This document shows, one piece after another, positions 8,258 through 36,777 of a DNA stretch of 64,000 nucleotides; positions within the stretch are counted from its first letter, which is position 1; each line of letters begins with the position of its first letter. A model generated the notes under the pieces. That model had not been told where the DNA came from. It did not search any database and saw nothing but the letters and a program-made list of their open reading frames with translations. The stretch spans positions 62,001 to 126,000 of IMG/VR virus record IMGVR_UViG_3300032116_014939; one strand, given 5' to 3'. The position numbers were made by a program, and so were the translations under genes.

Positions 8258-11200
8258 TTATATATAGTTAAAATTGTTTGCAGTTGTATAAACAAGTCCT
8301 AAAGTGAACGAACCACCCGCCGCTCCATCAACACCACTTGTTCCTGATGAACCTGAACCAGAACTTCCTGATGAACCACTTGAACCAGAACCTGATGTTC
8401 CTGATGAACCAGCAGTACCTGAAGAACCACTTGAACCAGAACCTGATGTCCCAGATGAACCCGCGGTACCTGAAGAACCACTTGAGCCAGAACCTGAAGT
8501 CCCCGATGAACCCGCAGTACCTGAAGAACCACTTGAACCAGAACCTGATGTTCCTGATGAACCAGCAGTACCTGAACTACCTGATGAACCCGAACTACCT
8601 GAAGTACCTGATGTTCCAGATGAACCGCTAGTACCACTACTTCCATTTGACCCTGAAGTTCCCGATGAACCTGAAGTACCTGATGACCCTGAAGTTCCCG
8701 ATGAACCACTAGTTCCTCTTGAACCCGTACTACCCGATGAACCAGAGCTTCCTGATGACCCACTTGAACCCGAACCAGATGTTCCTGAAGAACCTGAACC
8801 TGATGACCCACTTGAACCAGATGTTCCACTAATACCATCTAGACCACTTGTTCCTGAAGAACCTGAACCTGAACTTCCTGATGACCCAGCACTTCCTGAT
8901 GTTCCCGAAGAACCGCTAGTTCCTGATGAACCTGAACCAGAACTTCCCGATGACCCAGCGCTTCCTGATGTTCCTGAAGAACCACTTGTTCCACTACTTC
9001 CTGTGATACCCGACGAACCAGAACTACCTGATGAGCCAGCACTTCCTGATGTTCCTGAAGAACCACTTGTTCCACTTGAACCAGAACTACCCGATGACCC
9101 AGCGCTTCCTGAAGTTCCACTTGTACCGCTAGAACCTGAAGTTCCCGATGAACCACTGGTACCTCTTGACCCTGTACTTCCTGAAGAACCTGAACTTCCA
9201 CTTGAGCCTGATGAACCTGATGTTCCCGAAGAGCCGCTAGACCCACTTGAACCTGATGAACCTGACGAGCCACTCGAACCAGATGTTCCTGATGAACCGC
9301 TAGTCCCCGAAGAACCTGAACCTGAACTTCCTGATGACCCAGCACTTCCACTTGAGCCAGAGGTACCCGAAGAACCTGACGTTCCGCTACTACCTGTAAT
9401 ACCCGATGAACCAGAACTTCCTGATGAACCACTACTACCTGATGTTCCTGAACTACCACTAGTTCCACTACTTCCTGTAATACCTGAAGAACCTGAACTA
9501 CCACTACTTCCTGATGAACCACTAGTTCCACTACTTCCTGTAATACCTGAAGAACCACTACTTCCTGATGAACCACTAGTTCCTGATGAGCCAGACGTTC
9601 CCGAAGAACCAGTATTTCCACTAGAACCTGAAGAACCACTTGTACCCGATGAACCCGATGTTCCACTAGAACCCGATGAACCACTTGAACCAGTGCTACC
9701 TGAAGAACCGCTAGTTCCTGATGTACCTGATGAACCTGAAGTTCCTCTTGAACCTGTACTTCCTGAAGAACCAGAACTTCCGCTTGAACCTGATGACCCA
9801 CTTGAACCTGAAGTTCCTGATGAACCACTAGTTCCTGATGAGCCAGCACTTCCTGATGACCCTGAACTTCCTGAAGAACCTGAAGTCCCTGAACTACCAC
9901 TAGTTCCACTACTTCCTGTTAAGCCTGAAGACCCACTACTTCCTGAAGAACCACTTGTTCCTGATGAACCTGATGTACCAGAACTACCTGTATTACCTGA
10001 ACTCCCACTTGAACCTGAACTTCCTGAAGAGCCTGAAGTTCCAGAACTACCACTTGTACCCGAAGAACCTGTATTACCCGAACTTCCACTTGAACCAGCA
10101 CTACCTGATGAACCGCTAGTTCCAGAAGAACCTGATGTGCCAGAACTTCCAGTAATACCTGATGAACCTGAACTACCACTTGAACCTGAGCTCCCTGAAG
10201 TTCCAGAACTTCCACTAGTACCCGATGAACCTGTATTTCCACTTGAACCTGAACTACCCGCACTTCCACTTGAACCCGATGTTCCTGAACTTCCACTTGT
10301 TCCTGATGAACCTGTATTACCCGAACTTCCGCTACTTCCTGAAGAACCACTTGACCCTGAAGTACCCGAAGAACCAGATGTTCCTGAACTTCCACTTGAA
10401 CCAGAAGAACCGCTAGTCCCTGATGTACCTGAAGAACCACTTGTTCCTCTTGAGCCCGTACTACCTGATGACCCTGAGCTTCCACTTGAACCTGAGCTTC
10501 CTGAAGTTCCAGAAGAACCACTTGTTCCACTACTTCCAGTATTACCTGACGAACCTGACGACCCACTTGAGCCAGAAGAACCTGAAGTTCCAGAAGAACC
10601 ACTTGTTCCACTTGAGCCAGCACTTCCGCTAGACCCCGAACTACCTGAAGAGCCAGAAGAACCTGATGTTCCACTTGACCCAGAAGTTCCTGATGAACCA
10701 CTATTACCCGAAGAACCTGAGCTTCCACTTGAACCAGAAGAACCTGATGTTCCTGAAGAACCTCCAGTACCACTTGAGCCAGTACTTCCACTACTACCTG
10801 ATGAACCCGAACTTCCTGATGTACCTGAACTACCACTAGTCCCTGAAGAACCTGTATTTCCACTTGAACCCGAACTACCCGAAGAACCCGATGAACCTGT
10901 ACTACCTGAACTTCCACTTGAGCCTGAAGACCCTGATGTTCCACTACTACCCGATGTACCTGAGCTTCCACTAGACCCTGACGAACCACTTGAGCCAGAA
11001 GAACCTGATGTTCCAGAACTTCCACTAGTACCGGATGAGCCAGTGTTTCCGCTTGAACCTGAACTACCCGAGCTTCCTGAAGAACCACTTGTACCTACTG
11101 AACCTGAAGTACCAGCACTACCGCTAGAACCACTACTTCCACTTGAACCTGATGAACCTGAGCTTCCACTAGAACCAGAACTACCTGATGTACCAGAACT

Positions 11201-14200
11201 TCCGTTAGAACCTGATGTACCTGAACTTCCTGATGTTCCTGATGAACCACTAGTTCCTCTTGAACCCGTACTACCTGATGAACCTGAACTTCCAGTTGAC
11301 CCTGACGAACCACTTGAACCAGAACTACCAGATGTTCCTGACGAACCACTAGTACCCGATGAACCTGTATTTCCACTTGACCCTGAACTACCACTTGAAC
11401 CAGAAGAACCTGATGTACCAGAACTACCATTAGAACCTGAAGTTCCAGATGAACCTGATGAACCTGAACTACCGCTTGAGCCAGCACTTCCCGATGTTCC
11501 TGAACTACCGTTAGAACCTGATGTTCCACTTGAACCACTACTACCTGATGAACCTGTGCTACCACTTGAACCAGATGAACCACTTGTTCCAACACTTCCG
11601 CTAGACCCTGAACTACCCGAACTTCCTGATGAACCACTTGTACCTGATGACCCAGAAGTTCCTGACGAGCCAGATGAACCTGATGAACCAGCACTTCCCG
11701 AAGAGCCACTTGTCCCTACTGAACCCGATGTTCCGCTTGACCCTGTAATACCTGATGAACCCGAACTACCTGAAGACCCACTTGAACCTGATGTTCCTGA
11801 ACTTCCACTAACACCTGATGAGCCTGAACTTCCACTAGAACCTGATGACCCTGAAGTTCCTGTTGAGCCAGATGTTCCTGAACTACCACTAGAACCAGAT
11901 GACCCTGAGCTTCCTGATGACCCACTTGTTCCCACACTACCACTAGTTCCTGAAGAACCCGTACTACCACTTGAGCCAGAAGAACCTGAACTTCCTGAAG
12001 TACCTGTTGAGCCAGATGTTCCTGAACTACCACTCGTACCTCTTGAACCTGTACTACCTGAACTTCCGCTTGAACCTGATGAACCGCTACTACCTGATGA
12101 ACCACTTGTTCCAGAAGAACCTGATGTACCAGAACTTCCGCTTGAGCCAGATGAACCAGCACTACCACTTGAGCCAGATGTCCCTGATGAACCACTCGTT
12201 CCACTTGAGCCAGTATTACCTGACGAACCAGAACTACCCGAACTTCCGCTAGAACCACTTGTACCCGATGTTCCTGAAGAACCACTAACACCTGATGACC
12301 CCGAACTCCCACTACTTCCACTTGAGCCAGAGCTTCCTGATGTACCACTTGAACCTGATGTTCCTGAAGACCCTGTACTACCACTTGAACCAGAAGAACC
12401 TGAACTACCCGATGTTCCAGCACTACCACTACTACCACTTGAACCTGATGTTCCAGCAGACCCCGATGTACCAAAACCTGATGACCCCGAACTTCCTCCC
12501 GAACCTGAGCTTCCACTAGAACCTGAAGTTCCTGAACTACCGCTAGTACCTGAAGAACCTGATGTTCCACTAGAACCAGATGAACCACTACTACCTGAAG
12601 AGCCAGATGAACCAGCACTTCCAGATGTACCAGAAGACCCTGAACTACCGCTAGAGCCTGAGGTACCACTTGTACCTACTGAACCTGATGTACCAGAACT
12701 TCCAGATGTCCCTGAAGTACCTCTCGACCCTGTTGAGCCTGAACTACCTGAAGACCCTGAACTTCCAGATGAACCTGATGTTCCGCTACTACCTGAAGTA
12801 CCGGCAGAACCTGAACTTCCTGAACTACCATTAGAACCTGATGTTCCACTAGAACCTGCACTTCCCGAACTTCCACTTGAACCTGATGTTCCTGCAGAAC
12901 CCGATGCACCACCTGTTCTATAATAAGTTTTACCTGTATTATCTACAACAACAAATTTTGTTTGATTATCATCTTGAGTAATTTGAGCAATTGTTAATTC
13001 ATTTGTTGTTGTTGCCGATGCAGTTATTTGATTAACATTAAATAAATCATTCCCTCCTAATCCTAAATCACCTGTCATTTGTCTTCCACCATCAACTAAA
13101 AGATATTGTTGGTGGTCATCAGCAGTTAAACCTAACAAATTACCGTGTACCGATGTCGCGTTAACACCACTTGACTTAAAACCAATTACAGGTCTAATAT
13201 CCTCAATTTGAACAATACCTCCAAATCCTTGTTGGATATAAACAGACGCAATTGATACCACACCATCCGTAAAATAATCAGGAGGTAATGGTAATGGAGC
13301 CGCCTCAGCTTCAACAAGAGTCGCATATTCTTGTTGACCTAAAACTAAAAAGTATTCTTCATTAATACCTTCACCGACAACATATAATGTATGTTTAGTA
13401 TAATACGATGTGGTTAATGCTGATAATGAATTTTCATTTTTATTATATTGAAAATTATTTACAAACGTAGTTGCACTTCTTGTCCAATTTGTACCATTGT
13501 TCCAATATTGTGTAAAACTTATTGGTGTTCCACCTGTTGGTGTAAAATTATTTTCTGATAACCAATAACTACCAGATGTCACATCAAGAGTAAATGATGT
13601 TGAACCTGTTGTAACAATAGAACCTGTTGAATAAACTGGACCTAACGCTTGTCTGTTAAAGCTTGATAATAAATTTGCAGTATGTTGAGCGTTGTATGGC
13701 GCAGCATCAATCAATTCAATACCTGTCGCGTTTGTAACTACTCGACCCATAATAATATTATAGAATGGGTCAGGTAATCCTGAATTTGCAACTAACGTTC
13801 CGTTATTTGAAATATAAATGTAGTTATCAGTTTCAGCACTTAATGTTAACTGACCATCAACCCAATCATATCTTTTAATAATACTATTATCTGTTTGGTC
13901 AGCTAAATATCCAAATCCTGCAGATGTATTGATTGTTCTACCACTAACAATAGTAATTGTACCACCACTTAATAATCCCATTGGACTACCTTGAAAAATC
14001 AGTGTAGAAGCATCTGTATGTGTTCCATCTGCGAAAGTAACCGATAACTTTCTTGTTACGTCGTTCTCACCATCCGTATCATCCAAGAAGTTCCAATAAA
14101 AGTCCTCACTTGCTGTAATTATTTTTGAGTGGTCTGAAATACCCTGAAATCTACCTATTGTCGATGCGTTTTCAATTAAAAAGTCATTAGTAATTGAATC

Positions 14201-16168
14201 GTGAATCATGGTACCAACCATTCTAAAAGTAGGCCCACCACCTGTATTTGGTACGTAAACGGCAATATCCCATTCTTGAATATCCATACCTGTTCCTTCC
14301 AATACCGCAGAGTCTGATAACACAAATGCGGTTGAACCTGTTAGTAATGCACCTTCAAAAGTACACCCGTTGAACGATAAAAGTGTTCCAGAGCCAGTAC
14401 CGCTATTACCAATAACATCATCATATGTTGGGAACAAGAAATAGTTTTCCATATTACCCAACGCCTGAAACCCATTAGTTGCTTCAACTTTTAATCCGTA
14501 ACTAAACTCACCATTAACATCGACATATTCACCATAGAACTTGGTATCTTGTGTTGATGATTTTATCCATACACCAATATCTGAATCATATATTGAAATC
14601 TTATGAGCTTGTCCAAAATCACCGATATCATCACAGTGAATTGCCGCATATCCTGCACCAGCACCTGATAATGTTAAAAACGATACTTCGTTATTAATAC
14701 CTATATTAATAATATGTTGAGTAGAACCCGTTGGGACAATTTGTGTAGTTTGAATATTACTACCCTCAATACTCACATACGGTTTTCCAGTTAAATTAAT
14801 TTGTCCCTCAGAAAATAACCCAGGTCCAACTCTAACCAAAAAACGATTATTAATTGACGAACCTGTAATCCAATCAACTGCACTCTTAATAGATGTAAAG
14901 TCACCACCTTTTTTAGCGACCGTAATAACTCTTGGGTCTTGGTTAACTTCATATAACGGAGCGTCAATCGGTATTGTAGTTTTTAAGAATGTATCAGTAC
15001 CTTCAATTTTACCTGTTGCAGTTGGATGTTCAACTAATACGTCTTGAGTATTATTTTCAAAGTTAAGAGCCGAACCAAATATACTTGGAGCTGAGCCCGT
15101 GTTTGGAGCATATATCGCAGTTACCCATCGTTGGAAATTAACTGCCGTTAATCTTAACGAACCTCCGTTTTCAACCCAAAATCCTGTTCCTGCCGCAACC
15201 CCAACAGCCTTTGTTAATAAACATCCGTTAACAATAAACGTACAACCTGGTTGGTCTGCCTTTGCAAATATTAATCCTGATGTCGTACTAACACCTCCAT
15301 TAGTAGATGTAACGTTTCTAAGTTGCATCCTACCAATACCACTACCATCATTTGTAACATAGAAACCTATAGTAAATGGATATCCACCATACTTAACGTT
15401 AGAACACTGTATGATACAGTTTCCACCACCTGTTCCAACAACTTTTGCGTGAGTATAGTTTGTACCAAATCTTACGTTTTCAACATATGCAATTGCATTA
15501 GTTTGAGGAGTTGTCGATGATGAATAAACAATAGACGACGCACTTGTTCCTGATGAACCTTGAATTTGCATGTCCTGAACCATTGATTGGTCGGCCATGA
15601 TGAAAACACTATTATTAGGATTACTTGCTTGTAGGATAGTTGTTGTACTATCACCACCTCTAACCGTAATCCATGATTTCATTGTGATGGTATCTTCAAT
15701 ATATAAACCAGGATAAACTCTAACTTCCCAAGTACTATTTGGAGTTGCACCTGTTATACTATCTACCGCATCTTTAACGGAATTAAAGTCTGTTGAACTA
15801 CCACTTAATCCAACAGTTACATAATTTTCTATAATTGTATTAAAATTATAACTTAACGATGTCCAATTTGTACCATCACTAGTTATTTGAATTGAATCAT
15901 TCTGAATTAATGTAACCGTAGTACTCCCATCTATAGTTTCACTACCATTTGGGTCAACAGTTATTGTACCGGTACCATTATTTTTAATTACATATAATTT
16001 ACCCTGCACACCTACCGCAGTAGGTAAATTAATAGTAAAAGTACCACCAGAGACAGCGACCATATAGTCGTCATCAGTAATCGTATATGTACTACCAATT
16101 GTTACTTGTGGATATGTTATACCACCTAAGGATATTATACCCCTTCTCGCAACAAACTCATTTGCCAT
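8258..16168 (-). CDS. Giant fibre protein (2636 aa): N-terminal anchor, two pectin-lyase-like beta-helix regions, ~1,525-aa Gly-X-Ser/Thr repeat, very short C-terminus
   Basis: MANEFVARRG start and TFTINLPTAVG...IKNNG..TI.V...ETIDG fibre module. DFNSVKDAVD..VRVYPGLY.E and GDFTSIKSAVD..VRVGPGLF.E are typical beta-helix caps. Followed by (GSS/GTS)n. Confidence 0.75.
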   Translation of the reverse strand: MANEFVARRGIISLGGITYPQVTIGSTYTITDDDYMVAVSGGTFTINLPTAVGVQGKLYVIKNNGTGTITVDPNGSETIDGSTTVTLIQNDSIQITSDGTNWTSLSYNFNTIIENYVTVGLSGSSTDFNSVKDAVDSITGATPNSTWEVRVYPGLYIEDTITMKSWITVRGGDSTTTILQASNPNNSVFIMADQSMVQDMQIQGSSGTSASSIVYSSSTTPQTNAIAYVENVRFGTNYTHAKVVGTGGGNCIIQCSNVKYGGYPFTIGFYVTNDGSGIGRMQLRNVTSTNGGVSTTSGLIFAKADQPGCTFIVNGCLLTKAVGVAAGTGFWVENGGSLRLTAVNFQRWVTAIYAPNTGSAPSIFGSALNFENNTQDVLVEHPTATGKIEGTDTFLKTTIPIDAPLYEVNQDPRVITVAKKGGDFTSIKSAVDWITGSSINNRFLVRVGPGLFSEGQINLTGKPYVSIEGSNIQTTQIVPTGSTQHIINIGINNEVSFLTLSGAGAGYAAIHCDDIGDFGQAHKISIYDSDIGVWIKSSTQDTKFYGEYVDVNGEFSYGLKVEATNGFQALGNMENYFLFPTYDDVIGNSGTGSGTLLSFNGCTFEGALLTGSTAFVLSDSAVLEGTGMDIQEWDIAVYVPNTGGGPTFRMVGTMIHDSITNDFLIENASTIGRFQGISDHSKIITASEDFYWNFLDDTDGENDVTRKLSVTFADGTHTDASTLIFQGSPMGLLSGGTITIVSGRTINTSAGFGYLADQTDNSIIKRYDWVDGQLTLSAETDNYIYISNNGTLVANSGLPDPFYNIIMGRVVTNATGIELIDAAPYNAQHTANLLSSFNRQALGPVYSTGSIVTTGSTSFTLDVTSGSYWLSENNFTPTGGTPISFTQYWNNGTNWTRSATTFVNNFQYNKNENSLSALTTSYYTKHTLYVVGEGINEEYFLVLGQQEYATLVEAEAAPLPLPPDYFTDGVVSIASVYIQQGFGGIVQIEDIRPVIGFKSSGVNATSVHGNLLGLTADDHQQYLLVDGGRQMTGDLGLGGNDLFNVNQITASATTTNELTIAQITQDDNQTKFVVVDNTGKTYYRTGGASGSAGTSGSSGSSGSAGSSGTSGSNGSSGSSGSAGTSGSSGTSGSSGSSGSSGSSGSTGSRGTSGTSGSSGTSGSVGTSGTSGSSGSSGSSGTSGSAGSSGSSGSSGSSGSSGTSGSSGTSGSSGTSGSSGSSGSGGSSGSSGFGTSGSAGTSGSSGSSGSAGTSGSSGSSGSSGSTGSSGTSGSSGTSGSSGSSGSSGSSGSSGVSGSSGTSGTSGSSGSSGSSGSSGNTGSSGTSGSSGTSGSSGSAGSSGSSGSSGTSGSSGTSGSSGSSGSSGSSGSSGSTGSRGTSGSSGTSGSTGTSGSSGSSGSSGSTGSSGTSGSVGTSGSSGSSGSSGSSGSSGTSGSTGTSGSSGSSGSSGSSGVSGSSGTSGSSGSSGSSGSSGITGSSGTSGSVGTSGSSGSAGSSGSSGSSGTSGSSGTSGSSGSSGSSGSSGSVGTSGSSGSSGSTGSSGSSGSSGTSGSNGSSGTSGSAGSSGSSGSSGSSGTSGSNGSSGTSGSSGSSGSSGSSGNTGSSGTSGSSGTSGSSGSSGSSGSTGSSGSSGSTGSRGTSGSSGTSGSSGTSGSNGSSGTSGSSGSSGSSGSSGSSGSSGSSGSAGTSGSVGTSGSSGSSGSSGSSGNTGSSGTSGSSGTSGSSGSSGSSGSSGSSGTSGSSGTSGSSGSSGSSGSTGSSGSSGSSGSSGNTGSSGTSGSSGTSGSSGSSGSSGSTGSSGTGGSSGTSGSSGSSGSSGSSGNSGSSGTSGSSGTSGSSGSSGSSGSSGSAGSSGTSGSSGTSGSSGSSGSSGSSGNTGSSGTSGSSGTSGSSGSSGSSGSSGSTGSRGTSGSSGTSGTSGSSGSSGSSGTSGSSGTSGSSGSSGSSGSSGNTGSSGTSGSSGTSGSSGSAGSSGSSGNTGSSGTSGSSGTSGSSGSSGSSGSSGITGSSGTSGSSGTSGSSGSAGSSGSSGNTGSSGTSGSSGTSGSSGSSGSSGSSGNTGSSGTSGSSGTSGSSGSSGSSGLTGSSGTSGSSGTSGSSGSSGSSGSAGSSGTSGSSGTSGSSGSSGSSGSSGSSGSTGSRGTSGSSGTSGTSGSSGSTGSSGSSGSSGTSGSSGTSGSSGSSGNTGSSGTSGSSGTSGSSGSSGSSGITGSSGTSGSSGSSGSSGSSGITGSSGTSGSSGTSGSSGSSGSSGSSGITGSSGTSGSSGTSGSSGSAGSSGSSGSGSSGTSGSSGTSGSSGSSGSSGSSGSSGSSGTSGSSGSSGSSGSSGSTGSRGTSGSSGTSGSSGTSGTSGSAGSSGSSGSSGTSGSSGTSGSAGSSGSSGSSGITGSSGTSGSSGTSGSAGSSGSSGSGSSGTSGSSGTSGSAGSSGSSGSGSSGTSGLDGISGTSGSSGSSGSGSSGTSGSGSSGSSGSSGSSGSTGSRGTSGSSGTSGSSGTSGSSGTSGSNGSSGTSGSSGTSGTSGSSGSSGSSGTAGSSGTSGSGSSGSSGTAGSSGTSGSGSSGSSGTAGSSGTSGSGSSGSSGTAGSSGTSGSGSSGSSGSSGSGSSGTSGVDGAAGGSFTLGLVYTTANNFNYI
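8333..12910 (-). repeat. Coding 9-nt/3-aa periodic repeat (Gly-Ser-Ser, Gly-Thr-Ser...), about 500 triplets
   Basis: Directly visible; Gly at every third residue with degenerate synonymous codons. Confidence 0.95.
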
Positions 16169-16252: not shown

Positions 16253-16262
16253 TCCTAAAATG

Positions 16263-16296
16263 AAAAAACCATCACATTTATTATTATGTGATGGTT
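16263..16296 (-). terminator. Rho-independent terminator after 16319..22315
   Basis: Perfect 11-bp stem AACCATCACAT/ATGTGATGGTT (16267-16277/16286-16296), 8-nt loop, T-tract on the minus strand. Confidence 0.8.
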
Positions 16297-16318
16297 CATG
16301 TTTTTATATATTTTAATA

Positions 16319-23549: not shown

Positions 23550-23550
23550 A

Positions 23551-27720: not shown

Positions 27721-27723
27721 ATC

Positions 27724-28968: not shown

Positions 28969-29021
28969 GTAAACGTTTTACCCAAAATGTATTAATTTTA
29001 AATAAAAATTAAAGAAATAAA

Positions 29022-29828: not shown

Positions 29829-29833
29829 TTTAT

Positions 29834-31651
29834 TTATAATCCATATTTTGATTTAGTATTATTATAGTTTGTTGTTACATCACTGGCGGTTAATCCTGTG
29901 GTATAAAAATAACAGGCACCTATTTTACCATTTAAATAAAGTGATGATATACCAGTACCAATGTAACCCAAATAAAGAGGGTTAGTTTCACTATATGTAT
30001 CAGTACCATGAGCGGTTGTTATATATTCGGTATTATTAATATACACTTTGGTGGTATTAGCAGTTGAGGTAATTCGTGAAACAAATGTAAATAAATACCA
30101 AGTATTAATTGAAACGGTTAACGTAGAGTCGGATATTTTTTGAACCCCCGTTCCATTTGTAACTACCCTCACAACGCCAGCATTCGAGAATAACCCACCC
30201 CAATACCCATCAAATCCAAATGAACTGGATAGTTTTCCAAAGACCGGAACTTGTTGACCTGAACTAGGTAAAACGTCAAATTTAACCCAAACTTGTATTG
30301 TTCTTTGGGTTGTAGTATTTAAACTAAGATTAGCAGTATGAGGTATACTTATTGTATTACTAGTCCCATTTAAATCAAAAATACCTCCGTCAGTAGACAA
30401 CCAAGTGGCACCATTTATAGTTGCGTTATTCCCATTCCCCGTTTCATCAGTCCAAGTACCACTAACATAATTAGTTGCATCTAACTTCATAAATAAATTA
30501 CTACTAATTACCCCACCCTCACTTGTTGATGACGGAGTAATTGTTGGTGTTGGTGTAATTGTATTTGTTGGGGTTTGTGTTGGTGTTGGAGTATTAGTTT
30601 GAGTGTTAGTAGGTGTAATTGTTGGTGTTATTGAAGGTGTTGGAGTTTGAGTATTAGTTGGAGTTGGAGTAGGTGATGGTGAAATAAATCTTGATGAAAA
30701 TGAATTAAAGTTTGTTAACACTTCTGTTGAACTTAAAACTCTATTGTAAGTCATTGCAATTGAAACTCTACCATTTAATAAATTACCTCCTGCGCCATAA
30801 GAACCAATCCTTGTAGAACCATTACCACTTACAGGTGTTTTTTGAGCAGTATATGTACTATCCTGAACACCATTAACATATAGAATGAAACCATTTGTTG
30901 TGTCAAAAGTAAGACATGCATTATACCAAACACCATTACTAAAACTTGTTGTTGAGGGATAAACACCATAATTACCCCAATTTGAGTGTCCACAGTATAA
31001 TTTATTTGAACCTGCAAAATACATAAAGTGTCCACCCGTATCGCTACTTAATAAGTTGTTATCAGCAGTTGAGTTTAGGTAAAACCAAACGTTTTTAGTA
31101 TATGCTGTTATTCCAACAGGAGTACCTGCAACGTTAACATATTGATTACTTCCGTTAAATGTAAGGTATCCATTATTACTTGAACTGAATGTCGGAGTAT
31201 TAATTAATGTTCCGTTGTTACCACTAAAACTTAAATCATCCCATCGTGAACCACTTCTTGGATATGATGAAACATAACCAGCATCAAGTAATAATGTTAA
31301 TCCATTAGTTACAATATCAGGATAATCAAGGTTAACACAAATAAGTCCTGTTTGACCTGTATACCATCCTAACGCTTCGTTAGCGGTACTAAATGTTTGA
31401 CCTGCAAATCCTTGAGTAAACCCAATAAGTTCTGAGTCGTTTTGAGCAACCACTATGGATGGTCCGGCAACAGCCTTGTTTCCATACATGGTATAACCAC
31501 CTGATGGTGGTATAATAGAATTCCAAAATCCTGTAACACTTGTTGGCCCGTATTCCGCACCTTCATTAATACCTAAAACCCAATCCTTAACTTTAATCGT
31601 ATTAGGATGAAAGGACGTTGAGTATTTTATTTTATTTGGTGGTATTGGCAT
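29834..31651 (-). CDS. Virion lectin-like protein with two LamG/ConA-like domains joined by a Pro/Thr linker
   Basis: Start moved to MPIPPNK (31651, TAATG overlap). LLLDAG..SSYP.SG..W.DLS..GNNGTL.N.PT...YNRVLS..EV..N occurs twice in variant form; TPTPTNTQTPTP linker. Confidence 0.75.
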   Translation of the reverse strand: MPIPPNKIKYSTSFHPNTIKVKDWVLGINEGAEYGPTSVTGFWNSIIPPSGGYTMYGNKAVAGPSIVVAQNDSELIGFTQGFAGQTFSTANEALGWYTGQTGLICVNLDYPDIVTNGLTLLLDAGYVSSYPRSGSRWDDLSFSGNNGTLINTPTFSSSNNGYLTFNGSNQYVNVAGTPVGITAYTKNVWFYLNSTADNNLLSSDTGGHFMYFAGSNKLYCGHSNWGNYGVYPSTTSFSNGVWYNACLTFDTTNGFILYVNGVQDSTYTAQKTPVSGNGSTRIGSYGAGGNLLNGRVSIAMTYNRVLSSTEVLTNFNSFSSRFISPSPTPTPTNTQTPTPSITPTITPTNTQTNTPTPTQTPTNTITPTPTITPSSTSEGGVISSNLFMKLDATNYVSGTWTDETGNGNNATINGATWLSTDGGIFDLNGTSNTISIPHTANLSLNTTTQRTIQVWVKFDVLPSSGQQVPVFGKLSSSFGFDGYWGGLFSNAGVVRVVTNGTGVQKISDSTLTVSINTWYLFTFVSRITSTANTTKVYINNTEYITTAHGTDTYSETNPLYLGYIGTGISSLYLNGKIGACYFYTTGLTASDVTTNYNNTKSKYGL

Positions 31652-34600
31652 TATCTTGCAACTTCTGTTATTCTTAACCACATTGATGTAGCCCCATTTA
31701 CTATTGTAATACTATCATCCGCAGAATCTCTACGACACGCAACAACTACTGATTTTGCAGTAGTGTTAGAGTTAGTATATCTTCCCGTTAATGGAAACAA
31801 TACACCACTACGATTACCATTTACAGTACTTTGTTTTGAATATGTTATTTCACTACCATCAATTTTTATTCTAGAAAAATATGAGTCATTACCTGTACCA
31901 CTAGCAAAACTATAATCCGCTAAATGATAATGTATCACTAAATAACTTGTAGAACTTAATGGTGTATAACTATAAGTAACAAAATCAGTATCCGAAGTAC
32001 TGGTAGCAATAGTTGTAGTACTAACAGTTACCTCAGTATTACTCAAAATAATATCGTTAATTACCTGACCGGCTCTCCATGCATTAGCCTTTATAAATCC
32101 TGTAAATACCACATTACCTGAAGTGTCTACGGCCATCTTTACAGCCCCACCAGTTTCATTTAATTTATTTGTGATACGAACTAACTGTCCACTTAAAACA
32201 TCAAATGAACCGTTCCAACTATCAATACCATAGTTTGAATTATTAGCATAATAAAACAAAACACCCGGAGTATCTGTACTATTATTATCAAGAATAACAT
32301 CACCAGTAGCTGACCCCGCCCTTGTAAATGTTCCGTTACCAAGAGAGGTTACACCTGTAGTACTTATATTACCAGTAATAGTCGTGGAACCAATAATTGT
32401 TGTATCACCTGTTACCGCCAGTTTAATTCCATCAAAAGTCATTTTAGCTTGAGCAACCGCAGCGTTAGCTGTTCCATCAGATGTTAATATTCTATTACTA
32501 CCCGGACTTGTAATTGTAGTAAATCCAGTACCTGATGTTCCAGCAGAACCTGAACTACCCGATGAACCTGATGTACCAGAACTACCTGACGTACCAGAGC
32601 TACCACTCGTTCCTGATGTACCCGAAGAACCTCTTGAACCTGATGTACCACTACTTCCACTTGACCCTGAAGAACCTGATGTTCCACTTATCCCATCTAA
32701 ACCACTTGTTCCCGATGAACCACCATTACCTGAGGTACCACTACTTCCTGACGTTCCTGAAGAACCCGATGAACCACTACTACCACTAGTACCTGAACTA
32801 CCCGAAGACCCTGATGTCCCACTACTTCCACTTGAGCCCGAACTTCCCGAAGAACCACTAGTTCCAGATGTACCTGAAGTTCCGTTAACACCACCTGTCT
32901 GATAATATGTATTACCACTAGTATCAACAACAACATAACGAGTATTTCCTGTTGAACTTGTAATTCCTGTAACAGTTAAACTACTTGTTGTTGTTCTACC
33001 TGAACCATTAAAATGAATTCTATCAATACCTGAACCATCTTGAATAACTAACACATTGTCGGCATCCGACGCACTACCTCTTCTAAAAGTAATTCCATCA
33101 AGAGTTGAGTTAGTTGTTATTTCTGGTTCAGATGAGTTGTTATATGCTTGTTGTAATGTAGTTGTCGCAACACCTCCCGCAGAACCTACAGTTTCACCAA
33201 ATTTTGATGCAAAAAAGAATTGAGCTTTAGATGAATCACTTAAATCAGTTGCAGTACTTACAACTGATAAAACACCAATTAAAATACCATTACTTGTAAA
33301 ATTACTAAACGTATTAAATTGTTCAGTTGCAAGACCAGCGATTGCTGCAGATAACTGATTATATTCTGTTTGACCATATTGAACTCTAAATTGACCATTT
33401 TGAACCAAATAAATTCTTTGGTTGGTTGCCTTTGTTCCTGTAAGAGGAGTAACAACTCCACCAACATCATAATTTAACGGGTCAATAAATGTTGTATTTG
33501 ATGCGGTACCACCTGTTTGTGTTCGATATTGAAAAGTACAAGGACTTGTACCTGTAACATATAACGCGTTTGGAGTTAGTGTACTTGACGCAAAATTAAT
33601 ACCTAAACCATAAAGATATCCTGCACTTGTATTAAAACTTAAATTAACACCATTAGCTGACGGATATATTCCACCATTTATAAGATTAATAGGAACAAAC
33701 ATGTCCCTGAGTTGAGCTAATGGAGATAGTACAAAATCAGGTTGACTGAACGCGTTAATAATATTTGTTTTGTTTGCATGACCTAATTTACCTAAAAATA
33801 TATTTTGTCTTCTTTGTTGTTCCGTTAGTTCAATATTTGATTGAGCAATAGTCGACCCACTTGTAAGATATACCCAAGTCTCAGTATCAGTATTAACATA
33901 TATTGCAGTATGAGTACCACCACTATAATCAACATAATAGATTTGAGGACTTAATGGATTTGTTGTATCATCAACTATCCACCCTTTAACAGGTGCAACT
34001 CTAAACGTTGTTGTGGATACAATTGATAATCCTGTAAATACAAATACACCTGTTGAGTTATTAACAGTACTTCTATCTTGTCCTAAAATTACCCATTGAG
34101 AACCATTACTCACAAGTTGTGCGGCGTTTGTTTCACTTAGAATTAATAAAGTTTTATCGTCAATCTTTTCACTCCCATAGGGTAGAATAGTTACCGCACC
34201 TCCACCATTATTTTTGATAGCTAATAGTCGACCTTGAATACCAACTGCGGTTGGTAATTGTACATTAAAGGTACCACCAGTAATGTCCACCATATAATCT
34301 GAAGGTGTAATATTATATGTACTAGTAACGGTTTTTTGAGGAAATGTGATACCACCTGTAGATGTTATCCCACTAGTCTGAGTTAAACCTGTAACAGTTA
34401 AAGTACTAGCGGTTAATCCGCTTGTAAAATAAGTATTACCATAAACAGTTCCACCAGTTAATGGTAAGTAATCACCACTAACACCTCCACCACCTGGTAT
34501 GGTAACTGTAACCGCAGGACCTCCTGTTGCATTAACACCTGAGCCAACAAAATCAATAGATGTTACCCCTGATGTTAATAAACTACCTTCGTTATAAATC

Positions 34601-35763
34601 GATATAGCGTTTCCTGATATACCACTACTTCCTGAACTACCAGAAGAACCCGGAGAACCTGTTGGACCTGAAGTACCCGATGTACCAGAACTTCCTGATG
34701 ACCCACTACTACCTGATGAACCTGAACTACCATTTGTACCAGTACCTCCACCTCCACCATTAACAGGAATAACTGTAACAATCAAAGAAGGGATTGCCGG
34801 ATGTAACGCAGTTGCCGCCTGAGCATATAAAGATATATTAGTATTATCTGTCGCCCACATTAATTCAACATATGTTCCAGCGGTAACTGTAACCAAGAAG
34901 TCCCAAGCCGCAACAACATATCTATTATTAGTTTGAACTGTAACTTGAGTATCAGTATAAGGAACGTCAACACCATTTTGCCTTAACCATATATCAACAT
35001 CTTCACCCGAACCACCACCTCCATTATTACTTAATTGAACTGAAAATTGGATGTCATATGTTCCCGCACTTGCGAAAGTAATCTGACTACCCGAAACAAT
35101 TGTGATACCACTAGCCTCAGCGACACTATTTAACCTCATTGGATAAGCGGTATTAATCAAAGAAGCGGTTTGTCCTGAAGTATCATAGAATGAACCATAA
35201 GCATTCGCTCCCGTAACACCACCTGACGAACCCGTTACAAACTTTCTCCATACCGCAGTAGTATATGTTGCCCCACTAACATCTTCAATAGTGTTAGCCG
35301 TCCAAGAATTAATAAACGACTGACCCGCAGCCGTTTTATTATTTATTGTTGTTCCAAAATTAGAAACCTGAGCACATCCCGTACTAGCAGTCGCAGCATT
35401 AAATAACGTCTCGTAATCATTAATATGGTATTGATAAACTTGGTCAACCTCATAAACATAAGCCAACATACCAAGTCGTCTTCTACCTGATGAGATGTTA
35501 TCTGAAGCCAAAGTAATTACATCAGGTGACCAAGCATCTCCCGTTCCTTTTGTAAACTCAATAGGAATAGTATTACCCGAATATTCAATACTTCCCGTGG
35601 TACCTGATGGTATTGTATAATAGAGGTCAGATAAACTGAACACCTCCATGTAACCACCCGTATTATTAACACTGAAAGTAGTACCATACGTATTGTTTCT
35701 TGGTACAGTTTGTGTTCCATTTGCTTGGATAGATGATATTGGGTTTTTATATGGGAAACTCAT
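31651..35763 (-). CDS. Fibre protein (1370 aa) with short Gly-X-Ser repeats; mosaic of the modules in both giant fibres
   Basis: SSGRRRLGM N-domain, LPTAVG..G....IKNNG module, GSS/GTS tracts at about 32530-32885 and 34620-34740, RILTSDG..AQAKMTFDG. Confidence 0.7.
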   Translation of the reverse strand: MSFPYKNPISSIQANGTQTVPRNNTYGTTFSVNNTGGYMEVFSLSDLYYTIPSGTTGSIEYSGNTIPIEFTKGTGDAWSPDVITLASDNISSGRRRLGMLAYVYEVDQVYQYHINDYETLFNAATASTGCAQVSNFGTTINNKTAAGQSFINSWTANTIEDVSGATYTTAVWRKFVTGSSGGVTGANAYGSFYDTSGQTASLINTAYPMRLNSVAEASGITIVSGSQITFASAGTYDIQFSVQLSNNGGGGSGEDVDIWLRQNGVDVPYTDTQVTVQTNNRYVVAAWDFLVTVTAGTYVELMWATDNTNISLYAQAATALHPAIPSLIVTVIPVNGGGGGTGTNGSSGSSGSSGSSGSSGTSGTSGPTGSPGSSGSSGSSGISGNAISIYNEGSLLTSGVTSIDFVGSGVNATGGPAVTVTIPGGGGVSGDYLPLTGGTVYGNTYFTSGLTASTLTVTGLTQTSGITSTGGITFPQKTVTSTYNITPSDYMVDITGGTFNVQLPTAVGIQGRLLAIKNNGGGAVTILPYGSEKIDDKTLLILSETNAAQLVSNGSQWVILGQDRSTVNNSTGVFVFTGLSIVSTTTFRVAPVKGWIVDDTTNPLSPQIYYVDYSGGTHTAIYVNTDTETWVYLTSGSTIAQSNIELTEQQRRQNIFLGKLGHANKTNIINAFSQPDFVLSPLAQLRDMFVPINLINGGIYPSANGVNLSFNTSAGYLYGLGINFASSTLTPNALYVTGTSPCTFQYRTQTGGTASNTTFIDPLNYDVGGVVTPLTGTKATNQRIYLVQNGQFRVQYGQTEYNQLSAAIAGLATEQFNTFSNFTSNGILIGVLSVVSTATDLSDSSKAQFFFASKFGETVGSAGGVATTTLQQAYNNSSEPEITTNSTLDGITFRRGSASDADNVLVIQDGSGIDRIHFNGSGRTTTSSLTVTGITSSTGNTRYVVVDTSGNTYYQTGGVNGTSGTSGTSGSSGSSGSSGSSGTSGSSGSSGTSGSSGSSGSSGTSGSSGTSGNGGSSGTSGLDGISGTSGSSGSSGSSGTSGSRGSSGTSGTSGSSGTSGSSGTSGSSGSSGSAGTSGTGFTTITSPGSNRILTSDGTANAAVAQAKMTFDGIKLAVTGDTTIIGSTTITGNISTTGVTSLGNGTFTRAGSATGDVILDNNSTDTPGVLFYYANNSNYGIDSWNGSFDVLSGQLVRITNKLNETGGAVKMAVDTSGNVVFTGFIKANAWRAGQVINDIILSNTEVTVSTTTIATSTSDTDFVTYSYTPLSSTSYLVIHYHLADYSFASGTGNDSYFSRIKIDGSEITYSKQSTVNGNRSGVLFPLTGRYTNSNTTAKSVVVACRRDSADDSITIVNGATSMWLRITEVAR

Positions 35764-35772
35764 TTACTATAA

Positions 35773-36777
35773 TTATATATCAACCTTACTTCCTCTAAAA
35801 TAAAGGTCGTAAGTATTATCCAATTCAAATGTATTTGATGGGTATGTAGTATAAACTCTATAAGTTGTTTTTGCAATAGTATTACCCGTATAAGTAAATG
35901 TATTAGTATAAATTGTCGGTTCCATCTTTACACTTGTAAAGACATTTGGATTTACAATTCCTAAATCAATCTCAATCTGATATTGGTTATTTGTTAAATT
36001 AGTCGGTATTATCCAAGTGTACCATGCTTTACATCCAATAGTATTTTCAGGTACTTTAACTGTTGGGAAATTATATCGAATATACGGATTACCATATGTA
36101 TCAAATCCCCCACTTGTTCCTGGCACAATTTGTTTTATAATACTTGGAAACAATCCTGTTGTCCATCCCGAAAAATTAACATATTTATTCATGTCCAAAT
36201 CAAATGTACTCGCTGAACTACTCGGTTGTGTAGTATTTGTAAACCCATAAAAACTTGAGCCAAGTGAGTTCATGTATGAACCAATACTTGATGAACCTGA
36301 ATACGGTTCAATGAATAAATAAGCGTAAATAGGAGTTTCAGGTGTCACAGTTGGAGTAGGGGTTCTTGTAACAGTTGGAGTAATTGTCTGAGTTGGGGTA
36401 TGAGATGGTGTAACTGTTTGTGTAGGTGTAATACTTGGTGTTATACTCGGTGTCGGTGTAAATGATGGAGTGATACTTGGTGTTGGAGTATTTGACGGAG
36501 TTAAAGAAATTGTTGGAGTAACACTTGGAGTAATACTTGGTGTTGGTGTTGGTGTTACACATATATATTCTTGTGTAAAAACACATCCTGTTGAATCAAC
36601 TATTTTAATTAAAACTTTTGGTGCCGATGAATATGGACTCGGAATATTAAAACTAACAGATGGTGGAATATAATCATATATAGTTGTCACAGTTTGACAA
36701 GAATATTGAAATATATCACAAACTGAAATAACATAAGGAGGTGTTCCTCCCAAACTATCTATTGTTACTAAACTCAT
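35773..36777 (-). CDS. Fibre adaptor protein with Cys N-domain and Pro/Thr linker
   Basis: [21 protein letters not shown] linker near-identical to the one in 22344..23549; paralogous C-domain. Confidence 0.6.

What the first reader, a model, noticed from the sequence alone, without database searches (positions are those of the whole stretch)
8258..36777. Candidate phage-encoded mucin-type O-glycosylation system for its own Ser/Thr-rich fibres
Seen: a tightly overlapping five-gene glycosyltransferase operon (23949-28968, six GT domains, no signal or TM segments) lies between two fibre modules. The flanking proteins carry about 3,100 residues of Gly-Ser/Thr-Ser repeat plus three Pro/Thr linkers. 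Established: the first gene has the motif series of GT60 enzymes, which put alpha-GlcNAc on protein hydroxyls (Dictyostelium Skp1-HyPro GlcNAcT; Trypanosoma cruzi mucin O-GlcNAcT acting on Thr). Bacterial serine-rich repeat proteins likewise sit beside their dedicated GT operons. Inference: GT60 primes Ser/Thr on the fibres, and the DxD, GT2 and two HtrL-like enzymes extend the chain, giving a glycan-coated phage appendage. This could stabilise or stiffen the fibre, shield it from proteases, or mimic host glycans. No sugar-nucleotide synthesis genes are in the window, so host donors are presumed.
Basis: partly seen in the sequence, partly recalled or inferred. Interest (0 to 1): 0.92.

Follow-up and report, generated by a model that had tools for sequence, protein, structure and literature searches.

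The report
Swappable glycan island in phage fibres
An uncultured freshwater jumbo phage carries, inside its tail-fibre genes, a sugar-adding gene island whose two end genes are conserved while its middle is swapped between relatives; it most likely coats the phage's own mucin-like and collagen-like fibres with sugars, though no glycan has been measured.

Summary
Five overlapping minus-strand genes (23949-28968) encode six soluble glycosyltransferase domains. These are a GT60/PF11397 enzyme, a GT6-like GT-A, an HtrL-like protein, a GT2-like protein and a two-domain HtrL+GT-A protein. They sit between fibre genes carrying about 3,150 residues of strict Gly-X-Y repeat (X/Y = Ser/Thr) and three Pro/Thr linkers.

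New here:
- The repeats are collagen-like (PF01391) but have no Pro, Lys or Glu.
- GT60 and the 556-aa protein are conserved anchors. They flank a cassette that is exchanged cleanly between near-identical phages: 32 architectures and 95 protein clusters in 80 loci. Cassettes carry fucosyl- and galactosyltransferases, sugar methyltransferases and sugar-nucleotide enzymes. They carry no Wzx, Wzy or lipid-carrier genes.
- The island stays within fibre genes in most relatives. (TPTx)n linker proteins flank it in 45 of 52 lineages; collagen-type fibres do so in only 6.
- Phage XacN1 has a homologous operon and PAS-stained virion proteins.

Verdict: virion-fibre O-glycosylation is the best reading (about 0.55). 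The conserved acceptor is more likely the Pro/Thr linkers than the GSS repeats. Host-surface remodelling is the main rival. This is a new variant of a known kind.

The parts
27724..28968 (-). GT60-family glycosyltransferase (414 aa). Conserved 5' anchor of the island and proposed initiating polypeptide GlcNAc-transferase.
   Evidence: PF11397 at E 2.7e-68 and phrog_24687 at E 8e-171. D92-x-H94, E204, E205 and H229 are invariant across 33 homologues down to 36% identity. It is 76-100% identical in 80 IMG/VR loci.
25620..27720 (-). Exchangeable cassette, here made of three genes.
   Evidence: Against L008 and L009 the DNA is 95% identical up to 27721/27724. There is no similarity across 27720-25620. 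Identity resumes at 91-92% from 25619/25622. Eighty loci show 32 architectures and 95 protein clusters.
27010..27720 (-). 236-aa GT-A glycosyltransferase with a GT6-like fold and a DxD motif (VDCDM).
   Evidence: AlphaFold2 model pLDDT 87. Foldseek against PDB gives ABO GTB/GTA, alpha-1,3-GalT and BoGT6a at E about 1e-6, TM 0.57-0.63.
26172..27035 (-). 287-aa HtrL-like protein.
   Evidence: hhalign of its family against the HtrL domain of the 556-aa protein: probability 96%, E 3.4e-9, with a shared WIDAGL motif.
25616..26179 (-). 187-aa GT2-like glycosyltransferase with a DDDD motif.
   Evidence: PF00535 at E 9e-5, 22.9 bits against a cut-off of 23.3. The family profile hits SpsA at E 4.6e-4.
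23949..25619 (-). 556-aa two-domain glycosyltransferase: N-terminal HtrL_YibB domain plus C-terminal GT-A domain with invariant E381-D382-D383. Conserved 3' anchor of the island.
   Evidence: PF09612 at E 2.7e-13. Model pLDDT 84. Foldseek top matches are dual GT-A enzymes: LH3, LARGE1, Mimivirus R699, COLGALT1 and K4CP, at E 4e-11 to 1e-8. It is 57-97% identical across loci.
23551..23919 (-). 122-aa protein that follows the island in most relatives. It is a paralogue of the N-terminal domain of the next gene and a probable fibre-attachment domain.
   Evidence: It is conserved after the 556-aa gene in most loci. In several loci it is fused to larger Pro/Thr-linker proteins. tblastn shows a second, 33%-identical copy directly downstream.
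22344..23576 (-). 410-aa fibre-like protein with a Pro/Thr linker at residues 148-202 (nt 22971-23135). Candidate acceptor.
16319..22315 (-). 1998-aa collagen-like fibre. Gly-X-Y lies within residues 211-1843 (nt 16787-21685), interrupted by a non-repeat stretch of about 120 residues, and includes one 1455-residue uninterrupted run. Candidate acceptor.
   Evidence: PF01391. Identical in four contigs.
8258..16168 (-). 2636-aa fibre. It has a 1086-aa N-terminal globular part followed by collagen-like Gly-X-Y at residues 1087-2592 (nt 8393-12910). Candidate acceptor.
   Evidence: PF01391 at E 2.3e-59 on a 410-aa sample.
31651..35763 (-). 1370-aa tail fibre with short collagen-like stretches totalling 162 residues. 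Its N-terminal domain is homologous to that of the 1998-aa fibre.
   Evidence: PHROG tail-fibre and collagen-like minor tail families. PF01391 at E 1e-19..
29834..31681 (-). 615-aa protein with concanavalin/LamG-like domains and a Pro/Thr linker at residues 323-394 (nt 30500-30715). Candidate acceptor.
   Evidence: PF13385 at E 5e-26..
29022..29828 (-). 268-aa protein with an F5/8 type C (discoidin-like) domain, directly upstream of GT60.
   Evidence: PF00754 at E 6e-6, just below the cut-off. phrog_17517 tail protein.
35773..36777 (-). 334-aa protein with a Pro/Thr linker at residues 70-152 (nt 36322-36570). Candidate acceptor.
16266..16297 (-). Terminator-like hairpin between the two giant fibre genes. 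It is the only minus-strand site found outside a coding sequence in 15.5-32 kb; a weaker one lies inside the 2636-aa gene (15790-15816).
   Evidence: 12-bp stem followed by a T run. This is consistent with fibres and glycosyltransferases sharing one transcript.

Best explanation
This is a phage-encoded cytoplasmic O-glycosylation island for the phage's own tail appendages.

Proposed mechanism:
1. The fibre genes and the five soluble glycosyltransferases are expressed together late in infection.
2. The conserved GT60 enzyme uses host UDP-GlcNAc to put the first sugar on Thr/Ser hydroxyls of extended, unfolded segments.
3. The conserved acceptors are the (T-P-T-x)n mucin-like linkers of the fibre proteins. 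In this lineage the Pro-free (Gly-Ser/Thr-Ser)n collagen-like rods probably serve as acceptors as well.
4. The conserved two-domain 556-aa enzyme and the exchangeable cassette (here GT6-like, HtrL-like and GT2-like) then build the rest of an oligosaccharide one sugar at a time.
5. Because the cassette is swapped between otherwise near-identical phages, the glycan behaves like a virion serotype.
6. The coat would stiffen and protect the linkers. It could also supply the stabilisation that a collagen helix without Pro or salt bridges lacks.

Shown: the gene content, the enzyme families and folds, the synteny, the cassette exchange and the co-location with linker proteins. Inferred: the donor, the acceptor, the order of action and the function.
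For: Location.
- The island lies inside the baseplate-fibre module, between fibre genes on the same strand. No minus-strand terminator-like site was found between 32 kb and 16.3 kb.
- The position within the module is permuted in some relatives (for example L052 and L036), yet it stays among fibre-like genes.

Family evidence.
- The initiator belongs to PF11397/GT60. Its characterised members glycosylate protein hydroxyls (established knowledge, from memory).
- Elsewhere the same domain is fused to prolyl-hydroxylase-like 2OG oxygenase domains (L087).
- It also sits with a PqqD peptide-binding protein, an HPr-kinase-like protein and a homologue of the 556-aa protein (L084, L086).

Conserved pairing. 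GT60 is paired with the 556-aa protein in every one of the 80 close loci that extends far enough. The pair also appears in marine and other distant contigs, and in 16 of 20 diverse loci with at least 8 kb downstream.

Cassette content. Cassettes hold sequentially acting oligosaccharide enzymes: GT25, GT10, GT11, GT7, GT61, GT32, GT-D, TcdA/B-like, RXYLT1-like, O-methyltransferases, Glf, a 2-epimerase, aminotransferases and acetyltransferases. About 90 representatives include no initiating phosphoglycosyltransferase, flippase, polymerase or ligase. The window's five enzymes have no membrane segment.

Linker association. Pro/Thr-linker proteins are concentrated next to the island.
- Gene rank -1: 37 of 78. 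Rank -2: 22 of 58. Rank +1: 16 of 69. Rank +2: 22 of 62.
- Ranks -5 and -6: 3 of 49. Ranks +3 and +4: 0 of 37. Cassette genes: 0 of 341.
- Non-redundant count: 45 of 52 lineages.
- L128 lacks the island at the usual site and also lacks the linkers.

Experimental and literature support.
- XacN1 carries GT60 at 47% identity and the 556-aa protein at 42%, convergent on its baseplate and giant-fibre genes. Its ORF325 has Pro/Thr linkers, and its virions show at least two PAS-stained bands.
- The collagen-like rods have no Pro, Lys or Glu. (Gly-Pro-Thr)10 folds only when its Thr residues are glycosylated (PMC11923368).
- The collagen-like region of C. difficile BclA3 is O-GlcNAcylated on Thr by the adjacent SgtA (PMC7157674).
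Against: - No glycan, activity or expression data exist for this phage.
- Tail-fibre modules are general hot spots for accessory genes, so adjacency alone is weak evidence.
- L103 has Pro/Thr-linker fibres followed by the 122-aa gene, with no island in the 19 kb seen.
- Collagen-type fibres accompany the island in only 6 of 52 lineages.
- GT25, GT10, GT11 and HtrL are also typical of LPS/LOS outer-core synthesis by soluble enzymes. Similar clusters in cyanomyoviruses are conventionally assigned to host-surface modification.
- The GT60 family profile found no solved structure by sequence, so kinship with the characterised Skp1 enzyme rests on the Pfam model only.
- The glycoprotein bands of XacN1 were not identified, and that phage also has a GT9-like gene.
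Confidence: 0.55

Rival explanations
1. Host-surface remodelling. The island rebuilds the infected cell's LPS/LOS outer core or another surface glycan from the cytoplasmic face. This would block superinfection or stop progeny sticking to debris. The cassette diversity would then mirror host serotype diversity.
For: Cassette families GT25, GT10, GT11, GT2 and HtrL/YibB are classic LOS/LPS enzymes and need no membrane segment. Polymorphic glycosyltransferase clusters in jumbo cyanophages are interpreted this way (PMC7824862; PMC12801897).
Against: - The conserved anchor is a GT60 polypeptide-type enzyme, not an LPS enzyme.
- No lipid-carrier, flippase, polymerase or ligase gene occurs in about 90 cassette representatives.
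- The island sits inside late structural genes and next to linker-bearing fibres in most relatives.
- Distant GT60 plus HtrL pairs sit with peptide-binding PqqD proteins.
- XacN1 virions carry glycoproteins.
Confidence: 0.2
2. Glycosylation of other proteins. The island does glycosylate protein, but the targets are the capsid, sheath or tube (as in mycobacteriophages and chloroviruses) or host or non-structural proteins. The neighbouring fibres are not the targets.
For: The GT60 family evidence and the XacN1 PAS staining fit any virion protein equally well. The XacN1 bands were not identified. In XacN1 the operon also borders replication genes.
Against: The fibre-module location is maintained across relatives despite rearrangement. 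Mucin-like linkers, which are ideal O-glycosylation substrates, are enriched in the immediate neighbours.
Confidence: 0.12
3. DNA hypermodification. The enzymes attach sugars to hydroxymethylated bases of the phage genome to evade restriction.
For: The C-terminal domain of the 556-aa protein gives weak hits to TAGT (E 0.003, below the cut-off) and to phrog_842, beta-glucosyl-HMC alpha-glucosyltransferase (E 2e-5). Phage GT-A enzymes can build di- and trisaccharides on DNA (bioRxiv 10.1101/2023.12.21.572611). In XacN1 the operon is near the DNA polymerase gene.
Against: - No cytosine methyltransferase, TET-like dioxygenase or hydroxymethylase lies next to the island or anywhere in the 64-kb window.
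- The weak hits cover only the generic DxD region of a GT-A fold.
- Fucosyltransferases, Glf and O-methyltransferases fit a protein or lipid glycan better.
- The island is in a structural-gene context in most relatives.
Confidence: 0.05

Closest known systems
Mycobacteriophage virion glycosylation (Che8, Corndog and Myrna; Freeman et al. 2023; cited in PMC12619734, paper itself not held)
   Same: Phage-encoded glycosyltransferases O-glycosylate the phage's own structural proteins in the bacterial cytoplasm.
   Different: - There the targets are C-terminal tails of the capsid and tail-tube subunits.
- Here the proposed initiator is a GT60 enzyme and the proposed targets are tail-fibre linkers and collagen-like rods.
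- Here the genes form a two-anchor island with an exchangeable cassette.
- Nothing here is shown biochemically.
Eukaryotic GT60 pathways (Dictyostelium/Toxoplasma Skp1 hydroxyproline GlcNAc-transferase Gnt1 with its extending enzymes; Trypanosoma cruzi mucin Thr alpha-GlcNAc-transferase)
   Same: The Pfam family is the same (PF11397). The enzyme is soluble. The logic is alike: a protein-hydroxyl GlcNAc primer extended by Gal- and Fuc-type transferases. The acceptor sequences are Thr/Pro-rich and mucin-like.
   Different: The match is Pfam-level only, with no sequence hit to any solved structure. No prolyl hydroxylase is present in the window. The setting is a virus of bacteria. The extension enzymes are unrelated and variable.
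Collagen-like spore glycoproteins with dedicated glycosyltransferases (B. anthracis BclA; C. difficile BclA3 with SgtA; PMC7157674)
   Same: A Gly-X-Y protein forms long surface filaments. Its Thr residues are O-glycosylated, starting with GlcNAc, by an enzyme encoded next to it.
   Different: SgtA is a GT2/TPR enzyme that adds beta-GlcNAc. BclA repeats are Pro-rich (GPT). The phage repeats have no Pro at all and are five to ten times longer.
Giant-virus fibril glycosylation (Mimivirus and Megavirinae clade-specific glycan gene clusters; chlorovirus capsid glycans; PMC9614988)
   Same: Virus-encoded, host-independent glycosylation of the virion's own fibrils, with gene clusters that differ between clades. 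The 556-aa protein's fold matches Mimivirus R699 and other giant-virus dual GT-A enzymes.
   Different: These are eukaryotic viruses with different enzymes and sugars. Here the variation is a clean cassette swap between fixed anchor genes in a bacteriophage.
Bacterial O-antigen, capsule or LOS loci with conserved flanks, and cyanomyovirus 'LPS' gene clusters
   Same: A hypervariable middle lies between conserved flanking genes. The enzyme families overlap: GT25, GT10, GT11, GT2, methyltransferases and sugar-nucleotide enzymes.
   Different: There is no lipid-carrier initiation, flippase, polymerase or ligase. The fixed initiator is a polypeptide-type glycosyltransferase. The locus is embedded in virion fibre genes.
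Serine-rich repeat adhesin glycosylation (GtfA/GtfB with the accessory Sec system)
   Same: Very long Ser-rich repeat proteins lie beside a dedicated multi-glycosyltransferase operon, with cytoplasmic GlcNAc priming. One relative's cassette carries a GT-D (DUF1792)-like enzyme.
   Different: There is no GtfA/GtfB-type GT-B initiator and no SecA2/SecY2. The repeats are Gly-X-Y triplets rather than SxSx dipeptides.

Membership tests
CAZy GT60 / Pfam PF11397 (polypeptide alpha-GlcNAc-transferases) | Sequence match to the family model above its curated threshold | tested here: met
   231.4 bits against a cut-off of 21, E 2.7e-68.
CAZy GT60 / Pfam PF11397 (polypeptide alpha-GlcNAc-transferases) | GT-A metal-binding Asp-x-His/Asp motif and conserved catalytic-face residues | tested here: met
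   D92-S-H94, E204, E205 and H229 are invariant in 33 homologues down to 36% identity. That this is the family's catalytic motif is recalled, not tested.
CAZy GT60 / Pfam PF11397 (polypeptide alpha-GlcNAc-transferases) | Detectable kinship to a structurally characterised member (Skp1 Gnt1) | tested here: inconclusive
   phmmer and a 33-sequence profile found no PDB chain at E of 0.01 or below. No structure model of this protein was made.
CAZy GT60 / Pfam PF11397 (polypeptide alpha-GlcNAc-transferases) | Transfer of GlcNAc from UDP-GlcNAc to a protein Ser, Thr or Hyp hydroxyl | not testable with these tools
   Only indirect evidence: fusion to 2OG oxygenase domains (L087) and PqqD neighbours (L084, L086) elsewhere in the family.
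HtrL/YibB (PF09612, TIGR02192) | Match above threshold | tested here: met
   The 556-aa protein scores 50.6 bits on PF09612 against a cut-off of 24.1. It is not an equivalog of E. coli YibB: TIGR02192 gives 63 bits against a cut-off of 265. The 287-aa protein has no direct Pfam hit, but hhalign to this domain gives probability 96%.
Collagen triple-helix repeat proteins (PF01391) | Long uninterrupted Gly-X-Y periodicity and a match to the family model | tested here: met
   One run of 1455 residues (485 triplets). PF01391 at E 2.3e-59 on a 410-aa sample. DNA repeat periods are all multiples of 9 with only 57-93% matches, so the protein pattern is kept despite DNA divergence.
Collagen triple-helix repeat proteins (PF01391) | Known stabilisers of the helix: Pro/Hyp, or Lys-Gly-Asp/Glu salt bridges | tested here: not met
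   X and Y positions are 89-97% Ser or Thr. The two giant fibres have no Pro, Lys or Glu in their repeats (the 1370-aa fibre has two Pro) and only a few Arg and Asp. Viral collagens are normally rich in KGD (PMC11923368).
Collagen triple-helix repeat proteins (PF01391) | Formation of a trimeric triple helix | not testable with these tools
   Needs circular dichroism or electron microscopy of the protein, with and without glycan.
Lipid-carrier-dependent surface polysaccharide loci (O-antigen or capsule) | Initiating phosphoglycosyltransferase, Wzx flippase, Wzy polymerase or ABC exporter, and ligase | tested here: not met
   None among the five window proteins or about 90 cassette representatives. 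The window's five enzymes have no membrane segment.
Phage DNA base glycosylation systems | Glycosyltransferase linked to enzymes that make 5-hydroxymethyl pyrimidines; TAGT/JGT-type or T4-type glycosyltransferase | tested here: not met
   TAGT scores 18.1 bits against a cut-off of 27.5. No methyltransferase, dioxygenase or hydroxymethylase is present in the 64-kb window. The other roughly 180 kb of the genome was not seen.
Serine-rich repeat protein glycosylation (GtfA/B with aSec) | GtfA/GtfB GT-B initiator pair and the SecA2/SecY2 export system | tested here: not met
   No such Pfam matches in the window. The resemblance is functional only.
Phage-encoded virion glycosylation (mycobacteriophage type) | Glycan demonstrated on virion proteins and dependent on phage glycosyltransferases | not testable with these tools
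   The only indirect evidence is PAS-stained virion bands in XacN1, which has the homologous operon (PMC5852040).

The most novel reading that the evidence does not exclude
The phage carries the viral counterpart of an O-antigen: a swappable glycan serotype displayed on fibres that would be several hundred nanometres long if triple-helical. Two consequences would follow.
1. The glycan, rather than or as well as a protein tip, decides what the virion binds. It could serve as bait for glycan-binding surface proteins of a glycan-foraging host, or as camouflage against decoys and grazers. Cassette exchange would then switch host range.
2. The Pro-free, charge-free (Gly-Ser/Thr-Ser)n rod folds into a collagen helix only once glycosylated. 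That would make it a glycan-dependent collagen.
Probability: 0.15. Interest if true: 0.92.

Novelty: new variant of a known kind. Interest (0 to 1): 0.7.

Why it matters
Phage-encoded glycosylation of the phage's own virion has been shown in mycobacteriophages, the only phage case found in the literature consulted here. If this island does the same, the trait is widespread. More than 7,000 close GT60 homologues (capped count) and 414 IMG/VR contigs belong to an abundant group of freshwater jumbo phages.

Three further points would follow.
- The island uses a glycosyltransferase family known for eukaryotic protein O-GlcNAc priming.
- It is organised like a bacterial serotype locus, which implies strong diversifying selection on a virion surface glycan.
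- It would change how glycosyltransferase clusters in large aquatic phages are annotated. They are now routinely labelled host cell-wall or LPS genes.

It would also offer a natural test of whether sugars can replace hydroxyproline and salt bridges in holding together a collagen helix that would be 400 nm to about 1 micrometre long. The claim is directly testable in the cultured relative XacN1 and by co-expression in E. coli.

Tried and rejected
Searches that gave nothing useful:
- Megablast of the operon against 50,697 phage records found nothing. Only tblastn found four jumbo phages.
- Sequence searches of the PDB with GT60 (single sequence and profile), the 556-aa family and the 236-aa family gave no usable hit. 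Fold searches were needed instead.
- NCBIfam added nothing for four of the six proteins.
- The sigma-70 promoter scan showed no excess over shuffles, 62 against 59.7.
- Tandem Repeats Finder at a high score threshold found nothing, because the DNA repeats are degenerate.

Steps that were blocked:
I rebuilt it without XacN1 and sent no XacN1 or Xoo-sp13 sequence to a remote tool afterwards.
- The Freeman 2023 paper is not held, so the comparison with mycobacteriophages rests on citing papers and memory.

Questions left unresolved:
- I tried to learn whether distant lineages with giant Ser/Thr-only collagen fibres (L106, L107, L111) also carry the island.

Readings considered and rejected:
- The collagen-glycosyltransferase top hits (LH3, COLGALT1, Mimivirus R699) are not evidence of a specific collagen glycosyltransferase. 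TM is about 0.3 at 10% identity, which shows only a shared tandem GT-A architecture.
- The weak TAGT/phrog_842 hit is not evidence of DNA glycosylation.
- The Gly-rich paralogues at 4910-7607 are not collagen-like. They are GGxGG-type (PF21722).

Full report
**1. What is there**

The window is part of a large myovirus genome. It matches, among others, a 242-kb IMG/VR contig at 100% identity. Every gene of note is on the minus strand.
- Baseplate wedge proteins lie at 52146-54474.
- Replication and nucleotide genes (RNR, DnaB, UvsX, SSB) lie at 55.5-63.7 kb.
- Fibre-type proteins fill 404-52094.

*The five enzymes*
- The first gene is a clear GT60/PF11397 member (E 2.7e-68).
- The second has no family hit, but its model (pLDDT 87) is a GT-A fold closest to GT6 enzymes: the ABO transferases, alpha-1,3-GalT and BoGT6a.
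- The third is HtrL-like by profile-profile comparison (probability 96%).
- The fourth is GT2-like. It scores just below the Pfam cut-off, and its family profile hits SpsA.
- The fifth (556 aa) has an HtrL_YibB domain and a second GT-A domain. Its model (pLDDT 84) resembles tandem GT-A enzymes such as LH3, LARGE1, Mimivirus R699, COLGALT1 and chondroitin polymerase. I read this only as a shared two-domain architecture, because TM is about 0.3.

None of the five has a hydrophobic segment. The count of six soluble glycosyltransferase domains is therefore confirmed.

*The flanking proteins*

The repeats are strict Gly-X-Y triplets.
- There are 1470 residues in the 2636-aa protein, 1515 in the 1998-aa protein (one uninterrupted run of 1455) and 162 in the 1370-aa fibre.
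- The X position is Ser in about 70% of triplets and Thr in about 24%. The Y position is Ser in about 83%.
- They match the collagen triple-helix model (E 2.3e-59 for a 410-residue sample).
- They contain no Lys or Glu, and no Pro apart from two in the 1370-aa fibre.
- The underlying DNA repeats are degenerate, with 57-93% matches, and every period is a multiple of 9. The triplet pattern is therefore maintained at the protein level.
- The 1998-aa protein is identical in four contigs from different samples.

Three Pro/Thr linkers of the [11 protein letters not shown] type occur in the 334-, 615- and 410-aa proteins. They occur nowhere else in the window.

**2. What the relatives show**

GT60 has 414 relatives in IMG/VR and more than 7,000 close homologues in the protein collection. 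I examined the best 80 loci, which are 76-100% identical.

*Conserved anchors and a variable middle*
- GT60 is always first.
- A homologue of the 556-aa protein (57-97% identical) closes the island in every locus that extends far enough.
- Between them lie 1 to 13 or more genes, falling into 95 clusters and 32 architectures.
- Against L008 and L009 the DNA is 95% identical up to the GT60 stop codon. It is unalignable across the three middle genes. It is 91-92% identical again from the start codon of the 556-aa gene. That is a clean cassette replacement.

*Cassette content*
- Glycosyltransferases: GT25, GT10 and GT11 fucosyltransferases, a GT7-type galactosyltransferase, GT2, GT61, GT32, GT-D, and TcdA/B-like and RXYLT1-like enzymes.
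- Sugar-modifying enzymes: several sugar O-methyltransferases, DegT aminotransferases and acetyltransferases.
- Sugar-nucleotide enzymes: UDP-galactopyranose mutase, UDP-GlcNAc 2-epimerase, and nucleotidyl-transferases.
- There is no phosphoglycosyltransferase, flippase, polymerase or ligase.

*Pairing in distant contexts*

The GT60 plus 556-aa pairing also holds well beyond the close relatives.
- A marine contig (L083) carries it.
- Two contigs carry it together with PqqD and an HPr-kinase-like protein (L084, L086).
- XacN1 and Xoo-sp13 carry it.
- Among a diverse motif-based sample, 16 of 20 loci with at least 8 kb downstream carry it.

**3. Which fibres go with the island**

*Collagen-type fibres.* They lie within three genes of the island in only 6 of 52 non-redundant lineages. 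The window's own cassette type also occurs in phages without them nearby.

*Pro/Thr-linker proteins.* They lie within three genes in 45 of 52 lineages. They are concentrated in the immediate neighbours.
- Rank -1: 37 of 78. Rank -2: 22 of 58. Rank +1: 16 of 69. Rank +2: 22 of 62.
- Ranks -5 and -6: 3 of 49. Ranks +3 and +4: 0 of 37. Cassette genes: 0 of 341.
- Some neighbours carry up to about 845 residues of (TPTx)n.

*Exceptions cut both ways.*
- L128 lacks the island before the 122-aa gene and also lacks linkers.
- L103 lacks the island in the 19 kb seen but has linkers.

*Position.* The position of the island within the fibre module is permuted in some relatives (L052, L036), yet it stays among fibre-like genes.

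*XacN1.* The operon is convergent on the baseplate-wedge genes and on a 3313-aa protein with Pro/Thr linkers. Its authors saw at least two PAS-stained virion proteins.

**4. Mechanism**

The best reading is cytoplasmic O-glycosylation of the phage's own appendages.
1. GT60 primes Thr or Ser on extended segments.
2. The 556-aa enzyme and the cassette enzymes extend the chain.
3. The cassette sets a virion serotype.

The conserved acceptor is most likely the mucin-like linker. The Pro-free collagen rods are a lineage-specific and plausible second acceptor. They lack both known helix stabilisers, and Thr glycosylation can substitute for them (PMC11923368). An adjacent enzyme O-GlcNAcylates the collagen-like region of BclA3 (PMC7157674).

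Family-level support for a protein acceptor comes from two observations.
- A bacterial protein fuses GT60 to prolyl-hydroxylase-like domains (L087).
- GT60 also occurs with PqqD peptide-binding proteins.

Everything beyond gene content, folds and synteny is inference.

**5. Rivals**
- Host LPS/LOS remodelling is the serious one. The cassette families are typical of LOS synthesis, and comparable cyanophage clusters are annotated that way.
- DNA glycosylation has only a sub-threshold TAGT hit and no pathway partners in the window.
- Glycosylation of other virion proteins cannot be separated from the fibre model without proteomics.

**6. Verdict**

This is a new variant of phage or viral self-glycosylation, organised like a serotype locus. 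It is widespread and directly testable, but so far purely inferential.

Noticed in passing
window 4910-7607 (three genes) and 7802-8221: There are three paralogous Gly-rich proteins (30% Gly, GGxGG-type, PF21722 Gly_rich_2, not collagen-like). Each ends in ...(T/Q)CW, and a 139-aa gene precedes them. In relatives L036/L037 and L052 this block sits directly upstream of GT60; in L064-L066 one short Pro/Thr-linker gene lies between.
   Followed up: partly
window 36805-38985 and 2602-4632: SprB repeats (PF13573, E 3e-16 and 1e-4) occur in two fibre-module proteins. Together with about 31% G+C, this hints at a Bacteroidota host. The host was not otherwise investigated.
   Followed up: no
L088-L099 (homologues of window 16319-22315): The collagen-like fibre varies greatly in length among phages whose fibre N-terminal domain is 93-100% identical. 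It is 1295, 1998 or about 2435 aa, and in one lineage more than 3538 aa with at least 3318 Gly-X-Y residues. The longest would be about 1 micrometre if triple-helical.
   Followed up: partly
L087:10001-17386: A bacterial chromosome encodes a 2461-aa protein. It combines GT2, four GT60 stretches and prolyl-hydroxylase-like 2OG-Fe(II) oxygenase domains. This resembles a fused version of the eukaryotic Skp1 hydroxylation and GlcNAc pathway.
   Followed up: no
L084 and L086: These clusters have the layout: homologue of the 556-aa HtrL protein, GT60, PqqD (peptide-binding), HPr-kinase-like/ScmC protein, GT60. They look like a peptide-modifying (RiPP-like) glycosylation system of unknown product.
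   Followed up: partly
window 23551-23919 and 22344-22720: The 122-aa protein is a paralogue of the N-terminal domain of the next gene; the two genes overlap by 26 nt. In relatives the domain is fused to proteins of 228-996 aa, several with Pro/Thr linkers. It probably acts as a fibre-attachment module.
   Followed up: partly
window 8304-12923 (+) and 16773-21158 (+): Very long ORFs (1539 and 1461 aa) lie on the opposite strand inside the repeat regions. They arise because the repeated codons lack stops. They should not be annotated as genes.
   Followed up: no
L195, L196: GT60 homologues at 41-50% identity also occur on contigs labelled as giant-virus metagenome-assembled genomes (GVMAG). The family is therefore shared between jumbo phages and giant viruses.
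   Followed up: no
L080 (1618-aa protein) and L062 (2764-aa protein), directly upstream of GT60: Some relatives replace the collagen-like rod with extremely long (TPTx)n regions, up to about 845 residues. These are mucin-like fibres in the same position.
   Followed up: partly
L001 (XacN1 ORF333) and L002: In XacN1 and Xoo-sp13 the cassette includes a 765-aa carbamoyltransferase directly after GT60. This suggests carbamoylated sugars in those phages.
   Followed up: no
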